A stretch of DNA of 63,950 nucleotides, filler included, from Octopus bimaculoides (taxonomy: Eukaryota), in NCBI RefSeq assembly GCF_001194135.2. It is 5 parts of 5 records of this genome, joined end to end, with 100 filler letters (N's around TTAATTAATTAA, not from the genome) between each part and the next. Parts side by side here need not be neighbours in the genome. Positions count along the whole stretch, not along the records: positions 1 to 27,556 come from NC_069004.1; 4 more parts are not named here. One strand, written 5' to 3'. Made by a program: the position numbers and the translations under genes. The notes beneath the pieces were generated by a model, which did not search any database, had not been told where the DNA came from, and was given only the letters and a program-made list of their open reading frames with translations. Below are positions 3,606 to 9,661 of this stretch, piece by piece (position 1 is the stretch's first letter; every line of letters begins with the position of its first letter).

Positions 3606-3645
<40 letters not shown>

Positions 3646-4204
3646 CGTACGTACATACATACATACATACATACATACATACATACATACATACNNNNNN
3701 NNNNNNNNNNNNNNNNNNNNNNNNNNNNNNNNNNNNNNNNNNNNNNNNNNNNNNNNNNNNNNNNNNNNNNNNNNNNNNNNNNNNNNNNNNNNNNNNNNNN
3801 NNNNNNNNNNNNNNNNNNNNNNNNNNNNNNNNNNNNNNNNNNNNNNNNNNNNNNNNNNNNNNNNNNNNNNNNNNNNNNNNNNNNNNNNNNNNNNNNNNNN
3901 NNNNNNNNNNNNNNNNNNNNNNNNNNNNNNNNNNNNNNNNNNNNNNNNNNNNNNNNNNNNNNNNNNNNNNNNNNNNNNNNNNNNNNNNNNNNNNNNNNNN
4001 NNNNNNNNNNNNNNNNNNNNNNNNNNNNNNNNNNNNNNNNNNNNNNNNNNNNNNNNNNNNNNNNNNNNNNNNNNNNNNNNNNNNNNNNNNNNNNNNNNNN
4101 NNNNNNNNNNNNNNNNNNNNNNNNNNNNNNNNNNNNNNNNNNNNNNNNNNNNNNNNNNNNNNNNNNNNNNNNNNNNNNNNNNNNNNNNNNNNNNNNNTAT
4201 ATAT

Positions 4205-4410: not shown

Positions 4411-5666
4411 TATATATGTATTATGTATGTATGTATGCATATATATTTACATATCAAATATGTAAATGTAAGGTGTAGGAAATTAATAAGCTTCGAGCAG
4501 TTCGTAGAAGTTATTAAAAAACAACTTTCAGGAACAATAGTGGTTTATTGATATTTGCAACCACATGATTTCATGTTCAGTCCCACTGTACAGTACTTTT
4601 TATTACAGCAGCGGGTTGGCCAGTACGCCTTTTATCACAGCCCCAGGCCGACCAATGTGTCTGAAAAAAATATCTTGATTTTAACTACGGTTTTTAACGC
4701 ATCAAAATATATCTTTCCTGCATGCTAGATGGAGTTTATCCTATGAAAATACAGTTTTATGTATGTTGTTAACAATTGCTTTTAACTAATACATCTTTTC
4801 GTATGTTCTCAACAGTATTTATCCTTTGAAAAAAAAAGCTCCTTTATATACGGTAACGAGAGCTATTAAGCAACATTTTGGTTTCATGTTCCTCGCAACA
4901 GATACTAAATGACAGACCTGATAAACGAAACATGATGTTACACGAGCCAACGAGGAAGACTACATCAGTGATGTCCAAACCGCATCACTTAAAGCTACTA
5001 AGAGCAGCTCCGGAGATGATATCAGGTTTCAACGGCATTTATCCTAAAACAGCTCTAACATCCTGTCAGTTGGATTTTAAAGTATTAACTGCAAAAAAGA
5101 AAACAAGAAGAGAGAAAGAAAACTCAGTGAAAACTTTTAAGTGGTTGGCATTAATTAATCTAAAACTATGTAGTGGTATGCTTATTTATTTGCCTTTTAC
5201 CTGTTTCACACATTGGACTGCGGCCCTTCTGGGGCACCGCCTTGAAGGATTTAAATCGAAGAAATGGACCCCAGTACATATTTTTAAGTCTGGTACTTAC
5301 TATGCTGGTCTCTCTTACCAAACCACTAGGCTGCAAACACCGGTTGTCTAACAGAGAGACACACACACACATACACACACATACACACACATACGCACAC
5401 ATACACACGCATACACACATACCTTCACACTGCGAGACTAAAATCCCCGTTGACAGGCCACTGGTATTAAACAAAGTCTTAAACACTTGTGGTAAGGGGA
5501 TGGGTATCTCCAGTTCTCTGAAGCTACTGGATTTGTTTTGTATATGGACAGGTTGTTTCTCTAGGATTCATCAAGTGATCTAGACAACTCTGATGAGACA
5601 CAAAAAAGGGTTGAAAACCGATGAAAGCCATTCAAAATTTTTCTTTTTTCAATCTACAGAAATATA

Positions 5667-6098
5667 TGTTGGCAAACACTCTTTACTACATAGTACTGTT
5701 GCTGAATATCTCACGTTGTGAGATTTAAAAGTAGTAACTTTCTAATTTATAAATCAGTGACTAGTTGTCACTTTGAAAACTATATATTTCGAACGGGAAT
5801 TTGGCAGCGCCACCTCTAGCCGAACAATTATTCTGTGCTGACGAAGGGAAATAACCCAGAAATCGCGATACACAGATATTGTTTTGAGCTGAGCGGGGGT
5901 GCTAGATTCCCTTGTTCAAAAATATAAGGACACAGATCGTGTCGTATAGCCAGCTGGAGACAATGTCTCCTGCGGCTAAATTACAGCATCATTCGTCCTA
6001 AACCAGGACTGCCATGTTATGTTGGCAAACAATCTTTACTACAAAGTACTGTTGCTGGATATCTCACGTTGTGAGATTTAATAATAGTAAGTTTCTAA
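5667..6098 (+). mobile_element. Complete non-autonomous hammerhead-bearing retroelement (retrozyme-like / Penelope pseudo-LTR derived)
   Basis: 12-bp direct repeat TACAGAAATATA at 5655-5666 and 6099-6110 (TSD); 80-bp terminal direct repeats 5667-5746 and 6020-6099 (6 mismatches, period 353); intact hammerhead between them. Confidence 0.8.
5832..5876 (+). ncRNA. Minimal type I hammerhead ribozyme, intact core
   Basis: TCTGTG-CTGACGA-a GGG aaataa CCC a-GAAA-TCGCGA-T-A-CACAGA: 6-bp stem I, canonical CUGANGA/GAAA/UH, palindromic stem III ATCGCGAT, predicted cleavage after 5870. Confidence 0.85.
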
Positions 6099-7606
6099 TA
6101 CAGAAATATAGTTACATTTGACATGTTTGAATGTCTTCTAAGTAGATATACATATGTAATGTCTGTTTGCGAGAAATGAATGAATAATAACAGGGTACAT
6201 ACGTAACCAGAATGAAGAAAAGCCTGTGGTTAAACAAAATGAGCAGCAGTAGCAGCAGTGGCGGTTGTGGCAGCAACAGTAATAGCAGCAGTACATCTGT
6301 CAATGTATGACAAGTTGTAAGAAAACAGGGAAACGGCTAATATTACCAGGAGTTAACACACATACCTACGAATGTTCGAGTATAACGCCTCGTGCATGCG
6401 TGTGTGAGTGTGTGTGTGTGTATGTGCTTGTGTGTCTGTATAGTTGTGCGTGTATGTGTTTGTGTGTGTGTTTGCGTGTGTAAGTGCTTGAATGTGTGTG
6501 TGAACGTGTGTGTATTAGTGTGTGCATGTTTGAGTGTGTGCGTGCGTGGGAGCGCGTGTGTGTGCTTGTGCTTGTGTGTGTGTGTACTTGCGTGCGTGTC
6601 TGTGATAATTCAAGAAAAAAAGAAACCTTGGATATATTTATTCTTATCAATTAATTGACTCATTTATCTATGTCTAAATTCATTTTCTTATCCTAAATAT
6701 TTAATAGCCTTTCCAATTCACTGTATTTCACTTGTCACTTCATCTTTTGCCAAAATATACATATAACGTAATATATACATATATTTATATATTATATAAG
6801 TATATATTGGTGTATATATAAGTNNNNNNNNNNNNNNNNNNNNNNNNNNNNNNNNNNNNNNNNNNNNNNNNNNNNNNNNNNNNNNNNNNNNNNNNNNNNN
6901 NNNNNNNNNNNNNNNNNNNNNNNNNNNNNNNNNNNNNNNNNNNNNNNNNNNNNNNNNNNNNNNNNNNNNNNNNNNNNNNNNNNNNNNNNNNNNNNNNNNN
7001 NNNNNNNNNNNNNNNNNNNNNNNNNNNNNNNNNNNNNNNNNNNNNNNNNNNNNNNNNNNNNNNNNNNNNNNNNNNNNNNNNNNNNNNNNNNNNNNNNNNN
7101 NNNNNNNNNNNNNNNNNNNNNNNNNNNNNNNNNNNNNNNNNNNNNNNNNNNNNNNNNNNNNNNNNNNNNNNNNNNNNNNNNNNNNNNNNNNNNNNNNNNN
7201 NNNNNNNNNNNNNNNNNNNNNNNNNNNNNNNNNNNNNNNNNNNNNNNNNNNNNNNNNNNNNNNNNNNNNNNNNNNNNNNNNNNNNNNNNNNNNNNNNNNN
7301 NNNNNNNNNNNNNNNNNNNNNNNNNNNNNNNNNNNNNNNNNNNNNNNNNNNNNNNNNNNNNNNNNNNNNNNNNNNNNNNNNNNNNNNNNNNNNNNNNNNN
7401 NNNNNNNNNNNNNNNNNNNNNNNNNNNNNNNNNNNNNNNNNNNNNNNNNNNNNNNNNNNNNNNNNNNNNNNNNNNNNNNTATATATACATATATATACAT
7501 ATATGTGTGCGTATATATATATACACACACACATACGTATAGACATCTATATATAACGATATACATATACATTTATATATAAGTATAGAATATATAAACG
7601 CAAGGC

Positions 7607-8191: not shown

Positions 8192-9402
8192 TACCTTCTT
8201 CTTGGTTAATTAATTAAATTAAAGGCATATCAGCGAAAACGACGAATTTCTCCTTGTTATTACATCCATTTTCTTCTCGTATATATANNNNNNNNNNNNN
8301 NNNNNNNNNNNNNNNNNNNATATATATATATATATATATATAACATTTACATATTTATACGTGTGTGTGTACACAGATATATGCATATGTACATACATAT
8401 ATGTGTGTATGTGTGTGTGTCTTTGTGTTTGTGTTTGTCACCCCCACCACCACCACCACTTGACAACCCGCGTTAGTTTTTCTATGTCCCCGTAACTTTG
8501 TATCTCTTTTTTTTCTTTTCTCTTCTTTTCTTGCTTTTTTTTCCTCTCCGTTCAGCACTCCCCTCTCTCTCATTCACTGTCTTTCTCTTAGCCAACTATT
8601 AACCTTTCTATCTCTCCCTCCTTTTGCACCACGTGACTTGGCCATCCTGTTGTTAAAACTACTAATCCTTTTCTGCTAGCCCGTTCTCTATGCTAGTTTG
8701 TTTTCTCTTTTTTTTTTTTTCTGCATGTTTTGTCTGAGATTTTCGTCTTAGCTCCAGCTTATGGTTTGACTACGTTTAATTTATTATATCCTGTTTTTCT
8801 ATATATAGTACTTTTCTAAATCCGAAAGGATCACATTCTTTCCTGTTTGCCATTCGCCTTGCTTTCGTACAATTCATTTCTTAACTCTGTCGAATAGCCG
8901 AATGGCCTTCTATTATGTATAAACGTGTCATCTATTCTGTTTTCCTACCTTTGTTAATAGTTCCTATCTTTGCTTTTTTATTTTATATATTTTCCTGTTC
9001 TCTTCATAACTCATTCTTTTTACGTTCGGTCTAGGCACCTCGATTTTTTTGGTCAATATAAAGATCCTCACCCGGGAACCCAAAATGAAATTAACCAGCC
9101 TGGGGGGTGTTAATAAGTGTGTGGAAAACGAATATGACAAAAAAAAAGCGCGCTGTCGACCCTGCTGGGTGGGAAGGGGACTTGATTTCTTAATTTCACC
9201 GGAGTACGACTTGATTTCTTAATTTCACCGGAGTATAAATACCTATAATGGTATACTTAAAAACAAAAAAGAAAAATTAATTCAGTTCAATTAAAAGCAC
9301 GGCTAAGTAACGCATTCTAAACCATACTATAATTTGCGAAAATGTTTATATGCGCGCAGATACCTGCCTCCTCCGATGCTTTTTTTTCTCTCGTGTCTGG
9401 AC

Positions 9403-9661
9403 GTCTTTTCTTTGTTCGTAGTCATCTTTGCCTTGTTCGTGGTCGTCTTTTCCTTGTTCGTGGTCGTCTTTTCCTTGTTCGTGGTCGTCTTTTCCTTGTT
9501 CGTGGTCGTCTTTTCCTTGTTCGTGGTCGTCTTTTCCTTGTTCGTGGTCGTCTTTTCCTTGTTCGTGGTCGTCTTTTCCTTGTTCGTGGTCGTCTTTTCC
9601 TTGTTCGTGGTCGTCTTTTCCTTGTTCGTGGTCGTCTTTTCCTTGTTCGTGGTCGTCTTTC
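9403..9661. repeat. 21-bp minisatellite (GTCTTTTCCTTGTTCGTGGTC), 10 perfect, 2 diverged and 1 partial copy
   Basis: Directly visible; perfect units 9445-9654. Confidence 0.97.

What the first reader, a model, noticed from the sequence alone, without database searches (positions are those of the whole stretch)
5655..6110. Apparently complete retrozyme-like insertion: 12-bp TSD, 80-bp terminal redundancy and an intact hammerhead
Seen: TACAGAAATATA flanks both sides. The first 80 bp (5667-5746) recur at 6020-6099 with 6 mismatches, so the insert is 1.23 turns of a 353-nt monomer. The monomer holds a perfect minimal type I hammerhead (5832-5876) with palindromic stem III ATCGCGAT, and the redundant end carries a hairpin ATCTCAC-gtt-GTGAGAT. 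Established: minimal hammerheads with palindromic stem III are hallmarks of Penelope-like elements and cleave as dimers, and metazoan non-LTR retrozymes form small circular RNAs from hammerhead-bearing monomers. Inference: reverse transcription more than once round a 353-nt circular or tandem RNA, in trans by a Penelope RT/GIY-YIG enzyme, would give this structure. It is not a TRIM or LTR element (no TG..CA, TSD too long).
Basis: partly seen in the sequence, partly recalled or inferred. Interest (0 to 1): 0.88.

Follow-up and report, generated by a model that had tools for sequence, protein, structure and literature searches.

The report
Dead hammerhead-ribozyme retroposon copy, 1.23 units
This is an old, silent insertion of a small non-coding mobile element that carries a self-cleaving hammerhead ribozyme motif. 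It belongs to a family with thousands of copies in this animal and its relatives, so it is a clean new example of a known kind of element (animal "retrozymes" / Penelope-associated repeats), not a new kind.

Summary
The sequence features hold. TACAGAAATATA flanks a 432-bp insert (5667-6098). Its first 80 bp recur at its end (6 mismatches, period 353). All conserved hammerhead core bases are at 5832-5876, with palindromic helix III AUCGCGAU.

"Perfect" is overstated. Helix II is bracketed by two extra bases (A5845, A5858), and no Rfam hammerhead model matches.

New evidence:
- Both flanks belong to another repeat. Its uninterrupted paralogs carry one copy of the 12-mer, so this is a true insertion with a 12-bp target duplication.
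- The insert belongs to a family of thousands of mostly 5'-truncated copies in at least seven related species.
- The family consensus restores CUGAUGA. A sister family keeps the palindrome through a double change (AUCCGGAU).
- The unit folds far better than shuffles (z = -7), with the ribozyme at the tip of a 150-nt hairpin.
- Units that reach their 5' "head" are usually preceded by another tail, so templates exceeded one unit.

Not shown: cleavage, circular RNA, the reverse transcriptase (Penelope or LINE), and the host.

This copy is old, being shared by three species, and it is untranscribed.

Verdict: a new member of a known kind (animal non-LTR retrozyme / non-autonomous Penelope-like element), of moderate interest.

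The parts
5655..5666 (.). Left copy of the 12-bp target-site duplication TACAGAAATATA. Its last two bases (TA) also match the unit sequence before 6020, a 2-nt junction microhomology.
   Evidence: Exact repeat (D12). Chance about 1e-7. Uninterrupted paralogs of the flanking repeat carry a single, diverged copy of this 12-mer.
5667..5746 (+). Upstream partial unit: an 80-nt copy of the element's 3' tail (pseudo-LTR-like terminal redundancy).
   Evidence: It matches 6020-6099 at 74 of 80 positions, offset 353. At every mismatch at least one copy departs from the family majority base.
5708..5724 (+). Tail hairpin ATCTCAC-GTT-GTGAGAT, first copy.
   Evidence: Read from the sequence and predicted in the unit fold. 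The family majority base T at 5713 would weaken it, so there is no covariation support.
5747..6098 (+). One full unit, in the order head, ribozyme hairpin, core, tail. T6099 could be its 353rd base or the first base of the target duplication.
   Evidence: Period 353. As RNA it folds at -118.2 kcal/mol against -80.6 +/- 5.3 for shuffles, z = -7.1. As a circle cut at the ribozyme site, z = -7.2. GC content is 41%. No ORF of 90 aa or more overlaps it.
5780..5929 (+). Long imperfect hairpin with the hammerhead at its tip. It extends helix I by about 45 further pairs.
   Evidence: -54.2 kcal/mol, z = -5.5. Pair list. RNA-only strand-switch joints 5795<->5912 sit at its base: 33 reads in X24, 17 in X41 and 1 in DNA.
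5832..5876 (+). Type I hammerhead motif, part by part:
- helix I, 5832-5837 with 5871-5876;
- core C3-A9, 5838-5844;
- extra A, 5845;
- helix II, 5846-5848 with 5855-5857;
- loop 2 AAAUAA, 5849-5854;
- extra A, 5858;
- G12-A14, 5859-5861;
- palindromic helix III/loop 3 AUCGCGAU, 5862-5869;
- H17, A5870.
   Evidence: The only descriptor hit in the window, against 0.007 expected. Among family reads, 11 of 12 core positions show no variant at 4% or more (U4 is the exception), against 35 of 83 variable positions outside the core. No Rfam hit.
5870..5871 (+). Predicted self-cleavage site, between A5870 (H17) and C5871 (1.1).
   Evidence: Inferred from standard hammerhead numbering. RNA reads show no excess of ends here. 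A second family diverges from this one immediately after 5871.
6020..6098 (+). The 3' tail of the full unit. The insertion ends at the family's commonest 3' terminus.
   Evidence: The largest set of heterogeneous loose ends in the tail is behind 5745, which is equivalent to 6098: 90 and 75 reads, agreement about 0.4.
6061..6077 (+). Tail hairpin ATCTCAC-GTT-GTGAGAT, second copy.
6099..6110 (.). Right copy of the 12-bp target-site duplication.
   Evidence: D12. In organism G a paralog of the flanking repeat reads ...TTTTTTTCTCAATC and runs straight into 6099-6136.

Best explanation
The insert at 5667-6098 is an old, fixed and now silent copy of a short (353-nt unit), non-coding, highly structured retroposon. 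Its sense RNA carries a type I hammerhead ribozyme. This is the kind of element called an animal non-LTR retrozyme, or a non-autonomous Penelope-like element.

Proposed mechanism, with each step marked as shown or inferred:

1. Template (inferred). Master loci with two or more units are transcribed. The ribozyme has a 2-bp helix III with a palindromic CGCG loop. It is unstable alone and pairs with a second copy to form a double hammerhead. That would cut unit-length RNA between A5870 and C5871. The long helix I hairpin holds the ends together so that a host RNA ligase can circularise the RNA.

2. Reverse transcription (enzyme inferred). A reverse transcriptase supplied in trans starts on a nicked chromosomal target at a preferred point, the end of the tail (...UUUCUAA, position 6098). 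It copies the RNA towards its 5' end.

3. More than one unit copied (shown by anatomy). The template has no 5' end at the unit boundary because it is circular or multimeric. Synthesis therefore ran through one whole unit and 80 nt into the next before joining the other side of the target at a 2-nt microhomology.

4. Target duplication (shown). Staggered nicks 12 bp apart gave the TACAGAAATATA duplication.

Most family copies stopped earlier and are 5'-truncated (shown). This copy holds only one ribozyme, sits in untranscribed DNA and predates the split of three species. It is therefore a fossil and not a source element.
For: True insertion:
- The 12-bp duplication is exact.
- Both flanks belong to another repeat, and its paralogs in organisms B, D, E and G are uninterrupted with one copy of the 12-mer.
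- In one 544-nt contig the two flanks lie 73 nt apart. An empty site predicts 78 nt and a filled site 522 nt.

Family:
- Raw DNA reads give about 3,300 total depth at 5998-6015, about 1,000 over the ribozyme and about 100 over the head, against 0-1 on the flanks. This is a steady 5'-truncation gradient.
- The same profile and the same consensus differences appear in organisms A-D. Family words are held in A-G.

Fixed 3' end, no fixed 5' end:
- The commonest terminus is 5745, equivalent to 6098, with heterogeneous flanks.
- Depth stays about level across the tail-to-head junction, and no 'before 5747' loose ends appear among the top entries.

Ribozyme:
- All core bases are present and the motif is unique in the window.
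- The family majority restores CUGAUGA.
- Core positions are less variable than others: 1 of 12 against 35 of 83, p = 0.03.
- 12% of reads carry G5865C plus C5866G, giving AUCCGGAU, which is still a palindrome. 12% carry U5858, which pairs with A5845.
- The double-hammerhead cofold is -31.1 kcal/mol, against two monomers at -11.2 each.

Structured RNA: z = -7.1 to -7.2 for the unit and -5.5 for the ribozyme hairpin.

Transcripts: near-consensus RNA contigs cover 5753-5857 with 2 mismatches (organism B) and 5777-5877 with 3 mismatches (organism A).

Age:
- The orthologous site is filled in organisms D and E, at about 7-8% divergence.
- The locus is not transcribed, with flank RNA depth 0.

Literature match: unit size, low GC, TSD longer than 4 bp, type I hammerhead and self-paired RNA (PMC7229834); partial tandems and 5' truncation (PMC8557442); dispersed solo monomers and Penelope origin (bioRxiv 10.64898/2026.07.22.740005).
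Against: - No Rfam hammerhead model matches.
- The two bases bracketing helix II are unusual, and their effect on catalysis is unknown.
- RNA-seq shows equal coverage of both orientations, a profile like that of DNA, no pile of ends at 5870/5871 and no circle-specific reads. Cleavage and circles therefore have no direct support here. The libraries are ordinary cDNA libraries, which would be poor at catching small circles.
- Most copies are dispersed fragments and not tandem arrays, unlike classical retrozymes.
- Both strands fold about equally well, so folding does not identify the functional strand.
- No autonomous partner was seen. There is no RT or GIY-YIG domain in the window.
- Family statistics come from reads chosen for 85-88% likeness to this copy, which biases the 'consensus'.
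Confidence: 0.75

Rival explanations
1. This is a Penelope-style partial tandem made without any circular RNA. Unit-length linear transcripts run from the head at 5747 to the tail end at 6098. A Penelope-like RT/endonuclease copies one RNA and then jumps to the 3' end of a second RNA (or the intermediate is resolved as a partial tandem). That would give the 80-nt upstream tail as a pseudo-LTR. The hammerhead plays some other role, or no role, in making the template.
For: Partial tandems with a 5'-truncated upstream copy, heavy 5' truncation and non-autonomous derivatives that make head-to-tail insertions are described hallmarks of Penelope-like elements (PMC8557442). The tail-to-head junction coincides exactly with the family's preferred 3' terminus, as expected if RNAs really end there. 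RNA-seq gives no evidence of circles or of cleavage.
Against: It gives no reason for the conserved ribozyme, its palindromic helix III with a compensatory variant, or the extreme self-pairing of the unit. The partner element is unseen.
Confidence: 0.3
2. It is a SINE-like element mobilised by a LINE (for example a CR1- or RTE-type LINE that recognises a 3' stem-loop) and not by a Penelope-like enzyme. The hammerhead is a passenger or a processing signal.
For: A 12-bp TSD, a 5'-truncation gradient, a defined 3' end and a 3' hairpin about 20 nt from the terminus all fit LINE-type target-primed reverse transcription. If the host is an octopus, LINEs and 'unclassified SINEs' are its most abundant repeats (PMC13282606). 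The host is not verified.
Against: There is no tRNA-like head (ARAGORN finds none). There is no poly(A) or simple-repeat tail. Copies longer than one unit with tail-to-head junctions are not a usual LINE/SINE feature. In animals, type I hammerhead repeats track with Penelope-like elements.
Confidence: 0.15
3. It is a miniature LTR-type element (TRIM or LTR-retrozyme-like): two 80-bp LTRs around a 273-bp internal region.
For: There are direct terminal repeats plus a flanking duplication. Plant retrozymes have this layout (PMC4918200).
Against: The TSD is 12 bp, not 4-6 bp. The repeats start with TG but do not end with CA. No PBS or PPT is present. Family read depth runs smoothly across the supposed LTR/internal boundary at 6019/6020 and peaks there (1,619 to 1,332 per orientation). 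There is no excess of the 80-bp repeat of the kind solo LTRs would give. The hammerhead is not in the repeats.
Confidence: 0.02
4. It is a chance hammerhead-like motif in an ordinary repeat, with the redundancy produced by DNA-level tandem duplication.
For: No Rfam match. No cleavage evidence.
Against: The motif expectation is 0.007 per window. The family consensus is more canonical than this copy. A compensatory palindrome variant exists, and at least one other family shares the ribozyme. Paralogous empty sites and the exact 12-bp duplication show a single insertion event that included both tails.
Confidence: 0.03

Closest known systems
Animal non-LTR retrozymes (Cervera & de la Pena 2020, PMC7229834; Li, Clavereau & Pollet 2026 preprint, 10.64898/2026.07.22.740005)
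   Same: A non-coding unit of 150-450 bp (here 353) with low GC (41%). One type I hammerhead per unit, with a short palindromic helix III that favours dimeric action. A TSD longer than 4 bp and no LTR, PBS or PPT. A strongly self-paired RNA. Dispersed 'solo' copies are known to be inactive offspring.
   Different: The classical definition rests on tandem arrays (dimers to multimers) and on demonstrated circular RNA. This locus has 1.23 units. The family is mostly made of dispersed 5'-truncated fragments with a preferred 3' terminus, which is SINE-like behaviour. No circles or cleavage were shown. Helix II is bracketed by two extra bases. No report of such elements in this host lineage was found in the searched library.
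Penelope-like elements and their non-autonomous derivatives (Craig et al. 2021, PMC8557442; Cervera & de la Pena 2014, PMC4209133)
   Same: A partial-tandem insertion in which a 5'-truncated upstream copy forms a pseudo-LTR. Heavy 5' truncation. A hammerhead with a palindromic helix III and an extra base between A9 and G10.1. Thousands of copies.
   Different: There is no RT/GIY-YIG ORF here, and no sequence link to an autonomous element could be tested. The ribozyme has a normal 6-bp helix I and a short 3-bp helix II, unlike the 'minimal' Penelope form with a long helix II. In this copy the ribozyme lies outside the repeated 80 nt.
Schistosome Sm-alpha and newt satellite 2 hammerhead repeats
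   Same: Short, abundant, transcribed animal repeats with type I hammerheads. Those with a weak helix III act as dimers (Forster et al. 1988, as cited in PMC4209133).
   Different: Sm-alpha has a tRNA-like SINE head and newt satellite 2 is a tandem satellite (from my own knowledge). Here there is no tRNA-like head, and the copies are mainly dispersed and truncated.

Membership tests
Hammerhead ribozyme, type I | Conserved core C3 U4 G5 A6 N7 G8 A9 / G12 A13 A14 / A15.1-U16.1 / H17 (not G) | tested here: met
   CUGACGA at 5838-5844, GAA at 5859-5861, A5862...U5869 and A5870. The family majority has U at N7.
Hammerhead ribozyme, type I | Three helices around the core, with helix I open and helices II and III capped | tested here: met
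   Helix I has 6 bp and continues into a 150-nt hairpin. Helix II is GGG/CCC with an AAAUAA loop. Helix III is AU/AU with a CGCG loop.
Hammerhead ribozyme, type I | G10.1-C11.1 pair directly adjoining A9 and G12 | tested here: not met
   A5845 and A5858 lie between the core and the G-C pairs. In the family, position 5858 is A 48%, G 39% and U 12%. An extra base after A9 is known in Penelope hammerheads (PMC4209133). An extra base before G12 is not described there.
Hammerhead ribozyme, type I | Match to curated covariance models (Rfam hammerhead families) | tested here: not met
   No hit at E<=1 on the whole window, or at E<=10 on 5780-5930.
Hammerhead ribozyme, type I | Conservation or compensatory change among relatives | tested here: met
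   1 of 12 core positions is variable against 35 of 83 others (p = 0.03). AUCGCGAU changes to AUCCGGAU in about 12% of reads, very likely within the same reads. U5858 pairs with A5845. This evidence comes from read pile-ups, not from aligned full copies.
Hammerhead ribozyme, type I | Site-specific self-cleavage | not testable with these tools
   RNA-seq shows no excess of read ends at 5870/5871. That is uninformative for small, non-polyadenylated RNAs.
Animal non-LTR retrozyme | Non-coding unit of about 150-450 bp, low GC, with a type I hammerhead | tested here: met
   353 nt and 41% GC. No ORF of 90 aa or more. Hammerhead at 5832-5876.
Animal non-LTR retrozyme | Tandem arrangement (two or more units, each with a ribozyme) | tested here: inconclusive
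   This locus has 1.23 units and one ribozyme. At family level, tail-to-head junction reads match the depth of the heads. The 30-fold depth gradient shows that most copies are shorter than one unit. No long reads were available.
Animal non-LTR retrozyme | No LTR, PBS or PPT, and a TSD longer than the 4 bp of LTR retrozymes | tested here: met
   The 12-bp TSD is verified against paralogous empty sites. No PBS or PPT is visible in the sequence.
Animal non-LTR retrozyme | Expressed as unit-length linear and circular RNA | tested here: inconclusive
   Family RNA is present in transcriptomes of organisms A and B, including near-consensus contigs. There is no evidence for unit length or for circles.
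Animal non-LTR retrozyme | Highly self-paired RNA | tested here: met
   z = -7.2 as a circle and -7.1 as a linear unit, with 64% of bases paired.
Non-autonomous Penelope-like element | Partial tandem (pseudo-LTR) insertions and frequent 5' truncation | tested here: met
   80-nt upstream tail copy. Family depth gradient. Heads preceded by tails.
Non-autonomous Penelope-like element | Termini shared with an autonomous RT/GIY-YIG element of the same genome | not testable with these tools
   No genome assembly could be searched. The window has no RT or GIY-YIG domain. One lead: RNA reads show this tail joined to a different head that shares the first 11 nt (loose end behind 6099).
tRNA-derived SINE | tRNA-like head with pol III A and B boxes, and an A-rich or simple-repeat tail | tested here: not met
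   ARAGORN finds nothing in 5500-6300. The element ends ...GTTTCTAA.
LTR retrotransposon / TRIM / plant LTR retrozyme | TG...CA LTRs, PBS, PPT and a 4-6-bp TSD | tested here: not met
   The repeats end ...CTAA(T) and the TSD is 12 bp. Family depth is continuous across the supposed LTR boundary.

The most novel reading that the evidence does not exclude
The family may be a retrozyme that spreads like a SINE, with genomic copies that record rolling-circle reverse transcription of a small hammerhead circular RNA. The supporting pattern is one preferred initiation point in the tail, no 5' end at the unit boundary (full units are preceded by another tail) and thousands of 5'-truncated dispersed copies. 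They would also extend retrozymes to a lineage where I found no report of them.
Probability: 0.25. Interest if true: 0.65.

Novelty: new member of a known kind. Interest (0 to 1): 0.4.

Why it matters
This copy shows, at base-pair resolution, what one retrotransposition event of a hammerhead-bearing repeat looks like: an exact 12-bp target duplication, microhomology at both joints, start at the family's preferred 3' terminus, and read-through past one full unit. It is confirmed against uninterrupted paralogs of the target. Such anatomy is the main genomic evidence that animal retrozymes are copied from templates longer than a unit, whether circular or multimeric. The enzyme and the template form are still debated in the literature. 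The family is large, shared by several species, and transcribed, with near-consensus copies in the RNA data. It is therefore a practical system for testing whether the ribozyme makes circles and which reverse transcriptase moves them. For genome annotation, it means a set of 'unknown' or 'unclassified SINE' repeats in this lineage may need re-labelling.

Tried and rejected
- Rfam scans of the whole window and of 5780-5930 gave no hammerhead. All hits were microsatellite artefacts labelled as miRNAs.
- blastn of the element against the window found no second copy.
- Exact 21-mer scans of the metagenome, prokaryote-genome and viral collections gave 0 hits, so no family members could be fetched as sequence.
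- Searches for PacBio or Nanopore runs found none, so tandem arrays could not be read directly.
- The orthologous empty-site search gave no orthologous flank contigs at 85% or more in organisms B, C, F and G. Organisms D and E have the filled site. Uninterrupted paralogs of the flanking repeat served in its place.
- ARAGORN found no tRNA-like head.
- Pfam on eight non-repetitive ORFs of the window found no RT or endonuclease, only two sub-threshold chance hits.
- Strand asymmetry of folding as a way to pick the RNA strand: both strands give z of about -7, so it is uninformative.
- The tail hairpin as a conserved RT recognition signal: the family majority base at 5713/6066 breaks a pair, so it is unsupported.
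- The CTGATGA heptamer in the left flank as a second hammerhead: rejected by the descriptor search.
- Literature searches for hammerhead or retrozyme reports in cephalopods found none in the held library.
Full report
OBSERVATION

TACAGAAATATA stands at 5655-5666 and again at 6099-6110 (D12). The 80 nt at 5667-5746 recur at 6020-6099 with 6 mismatches and an offset of 353. A 12-mer match at a fixed place has a chance of about 1-3e-7 in this base composition. I wrote a hammerhead descriptor requiring helix I of at least 5 bp, CUGANGA, helix II of at least 3 bp, GAA, A15.1...U16.1, H17, and helix I closing. It hits once in the window, at 5832-5876 on the + strand. First-order random sequences of the same size give 0.007 hits. 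The tail hairpin ATCTCAC-GTT-GTGAGAT is present in both tail copies.

The ribozyme reads UCUGUG | CUGACGA | A | GGG AAAUAA CCC | A | GAA | AUCGCGAU | A(5870), cut, CACAGA. It is not 'perfect'. Helix II is bracketed by A5845 and A5858, which gives an A.A where G10.1-C11.1 normally closes the helix. No Rfam hammerhead model matches, even at E<=10 on a 151-nt query. An extra base between A9 and G10.1 is a described trait of Penelope-element hammerheads (PMC4209133). The extra base before G12 is not described there.

A TRUE INSERTION, CHECKED AGAINST PARALOGOUS EMPTY SITES

No orthologous empty site could be found. Organisms D and E, which are coded names for relatives of the source organism A, carry the insertion at the same place with about 7-8% divergence. 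The evidence is two contigs in D (5396-5694 and 6070-6421), a further D contig (5547-5694) and one in E (6086-6240, running on to the left).

However, both flanks (about 5553-5666 and 6099-6161) belong to another dispersed repeat, and its other copies are uninterrupted. In organisms D, E and G, contigs that match the right flank are preceded by ...TTTATTTTTTCAATCTAAGGAAGA or ...TTTTTTTCTCAATC. That is the left flank followed by a single, diverged copy of the 12-mer. In organism B, one 544-nt contig holds 5553-5586 and 6109-6155 only 73 nt apart. An empty site predicts 78 nt and a filled site 522 nt. So 5667-6098 entered as one piece and duplicated 12 bp of target. Both joints show small microhomologies: TA on the left and T on the right.

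THE FAMILY

The insert is one member of a very large family. In raw DNA reads of organism A (roughly 1x or less, since the flanks have depth 0-1), total depth climbs steadily. It is about 100 over the 'head' (5754-5790), about 1,000 over the ribozyme, and about 3,300 at 5998-6015. It then falls through the tail. Logan contigs of organisms A, B, C and D show the same profile and the same consensus differences. Organisms E, F and G also hold family words. The peak runs smoothly across 6019/6020, so that point is not an element boundary. This excludes an LTR-like reading.

When only the first tail copy is offered as target, the commonest true terminus is behind 5745. There, 90 and 75 reads run into unrelated A/T-rich flanks with agreement of about 0.4. 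Position 5745 is equivalent to 6098, the end of this insert. About half of the tails that reach that point continue into the head. Depth is nearly level from the junction into the head (about 40-50, then about 53 per orientation in X21; about 80, then about 91-100 in X22). No 'starts at 5747' loose ends appear among the best-supported ones.

Copies therefore share a preferred 3' end but have no preferred 5' end at the unit boundary. Whenever a copy is long enough to include the head, it usually runs on into another tail. That is the signature of target-primed reverse transcription on a template longer than one unit. It matches the partial tandems and pseudo-LTRs of Penelope-like elements and their non-autonomous derivatives (PMC8557442).

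At each of the six differences between the two tails of this copy, at least one copy has left the family majority base. At 5738/6091 both have. The tails were therefore very likely identical when inserted.

THE RIBOZYME IN THE FAMILY

About 82% of family reads have U at N7, which gives the canonical CUGAUGA. The C in this copy is private, and that position tolerates any base. In the pile-up, only 1 of 12 conserved core positions (U4, T>C in 10%) shows a variant at 4% or more. Outside the core the figure is 35 of 83 positions (p = 0.03). For G/C positions alone it is 0 of 4 against 29 of 43 (p = 0.02).

About 12% of reads carry G5865C together with C5866G, with equal counts and the same few start points. 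This turns AUCGCGAU into AUCCGGAU, which is again a palindrome. A similar share carries U5858, which pairs with A5845. A similar number of reads leave this family one base after the predicted cut and all continue GTTCGTGCTGCTGG... (agreement 0.93). The simplest reading is a second element family with a homologous ribozyme. It keeps the core, helix II and a palindromic helix III, but has a different helix I.

A third group leaves at 5862 and continues CCAUUGGU..., another near-palindrome. Conservation of a self-complementary helix III across families is what is expected of hammerheads that work as dimers (PMC4209133; PMC7229834).

RNA STRUCTURE

The monomeric hammerhead fold of this copy is worth +0.4 kcal/mol. 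Two copies cofold into the classical double hammerhead with an 8-bp intermolecular helix III, at -31.1 kcal/mol against two monomers at -11.2 each.

The ribozyme sits at the tip of a 150-nt hairpin, 5780-5929 (-54.2 kcal/mol, z = -5.5). In it, a 6-bp helix I is followed by a UAU/U internal loop and about 45 further pairs. RNA-only strand-switch joints 5795<->5912 lie at its base: 33 and 17 reads in two RNA runs against 1 in DNA.

The whole unit is a chain of hairpins. Its z-score is -7.1 as the linear unit 5747-6099 and -7.2 as a circle opened at the ribozyme site, with 64% of bases paired. The minus strand folds almost as well, so folding does not choose the strand. The orientation of the 5'-truncation gradient and of the ribozyme both point to the + strand RNA as the template.

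EXPRESSION

Family reads are present in cDNA libraries of organism A and in RNA assemblies of A and B. These include near-consensus contigs over 5753-5857 (2 mismatches) and 5777-5877 (3 mismatches). However, coverage is equal in both orientations and follows the DNA profile. No excess of ends is seen at 5870/5871, and nothing distinguishes circles from tandem DNA copies. The flanks of this locus have zero RNA depth, so this copy is silent. Cleavage and circular RNA are therefore inferred from the family resemblance and are not shown here.

WHAT IT IS AND HOW IT WORKS

The best reading is an old fossil copy of an animal non-LTR retrozyme, also described as a non-autonomous Penelope-like element.

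Shown:
- insertion with a 12-bp TSD;
- copying of 1.23 units;
- start at the family's preferred 3' terminus;
- a large, 5'-truncated family shared between species;
- a conserved hammerhead motif with a palindromic helix III;
- extreme self-pairing.

Inferred:
- dimeric self-cleavage at A5870|C5871;
- circularisation by a host ligase;
- reverse transcription in trans, either round a circle or along a multimer.

Unresolved:
- whether the template was circular. A Penelope-style template jump between linear unit RNAs would give the same DNA.
- which enzyme did it. No RT or GIY-YIG domain is in the window. A LINE with a matching 3' stem-loop cannot be excluded.

One lead exists. RNA reads show this tail joined to a different head that shares only TTATAAATCAG. 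This may be the autonomous partner or another dependent family.

COMPARISON AND NOVELTY

Unit size, GC content, ribozyme type, TSD length, self-pairing and the existence of dispersed 'solo' copies all match published retrozymes (PMC7229834; preprint 10.64898/2026.07.22.740005). The partial tandem, the truncation and the extra base after A9 match Penelope-like elements (PMC8557442; PMC4209133).

The differences are these. The family is mainly dispersed fragments and not tandem arrays. It has a preferred 3' terminus. There is a second extra base next to G12. No curated hammerhead model recognises the motif.

I found no report of hammerhead repeats or retrozymes in cephalopods in the searchable library. 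I also could not verify that the host is a cephalopod, because organism names are coded.

My verdict is a new member of a known kind, of moderate interest. It is a clean worked example and a possible re-annotation lead, but not a new mechanism.

Noticed in passing
window 5553-5666 and 6099-6161: Both flanks of the insert are two halves of another dispersed repeat. Uninterrupted copies exist in organisms B, D, E and G, so the insertion is nested in an older repeat. The repeat contains a CTGATGA heptamer (about 5585-5591), but my descriptor search calls no hammerhead there.
   Followed up: partly
not in the window; loose ends behind 6014, 6029, 6041, 6044, 5716, 5723, 5744 and 5868: A 30-nt near-perfect palindrome, AGGTTCGTCCATCGAT|ATCGATGGACGAACCT, follows copies of this family at many different break points. 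It could be a head-to-head junction of another element or a preferred target. It is absent from the window.
   Followed up: partly
window 5838-5871 (reads of organism A): About 110 DNA reads share the ribozyme up to C5871, one base past the predicted cut, and then all continue GTTCGTGCTGCTGGTCGAGGTGAGAGGGAT (agreement 0.93). They probably also carry AUCCGGAU and U5858. Either this is a second element family with a homologous ribozyme, or it is a junction formed at the cleavage site. A third group leaves at 5862 (CCATTGGTCCCCAGG...).
   Followed up: partly
window 5841, 5870, 5871, 5977, 5999, 6019, 6049: Some differences are common in RNA reads (20-45%) but rare in DNA reads (under 3%): A>C, A>G, C>T, T>C, T>C, A>G and C>T at those positions in order. 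They reflect a few highly expressed variant copies, A-to-I editing of the double-stranded regions, or both. This is not resolved.
   Followed up: no
window 6099 (RNA loose end): 76 and 50 RNA reads continue past the tail end with TTATAAATCAGCGTTATAGAGAAACATGCA. This is a tail-to-head junction whose head shares only the first 11 nt with this unit. It is a candidate for the autonomous partner or another family that uses the same tail.
   Followed up: no
window 5754-5790 versus 5694-5705: Head depth is about 1.7 times higher in DNA run X22 than in X21, while tail depth is about 0.9 times. This may be a copy-number difference in full-length or tandem units between individuals, or it may be library bias.
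   Followed up: no
window 6040-6045: Many family copies stop matching here and continue into heterogeneous flanks. This could be a second, shorter 3' terminus, or tail subfamilies with indels.
   Followed up: no
window 5349-5430 and 6383-6617: (ACAC/ACAT)n and (GT)n-rich microsatellites lie about 230-280 bp on either side of the insert and are inverted complements of each other (I1-I25). Penelope-like elements are reported to favour microsatellites (PMC8557442), but the insert itself lies in the other repeat.
   Followed up: no
window 3618-3688, 21206-21286 and many others: All Rfam 'miRNA' hits (mir-297, mir-3149, mir-466, mir-1277 and others) lie on TA/TG/CA microsatellites and score far below their gathering thresholds. 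They are artefacts.
   Followed up: yes
window 9398-9660: A 21-bp minisatellite, TGGTCGTCTTTTCCTTGTTCG, occurs 12.5 times at 96% identity. It produces long repetitive ORFs in several frames.
   Followed up: no
whole piece 1-27556: The piece holds 3,053 N in many assembly gaps beside microsatellites. GC is about 37% of the called bases (33% if the N are counted). No protein domain was found in the non-repetitive ORFs. It is gene-poor, repeat-rich DNA.
   Followed up: partly
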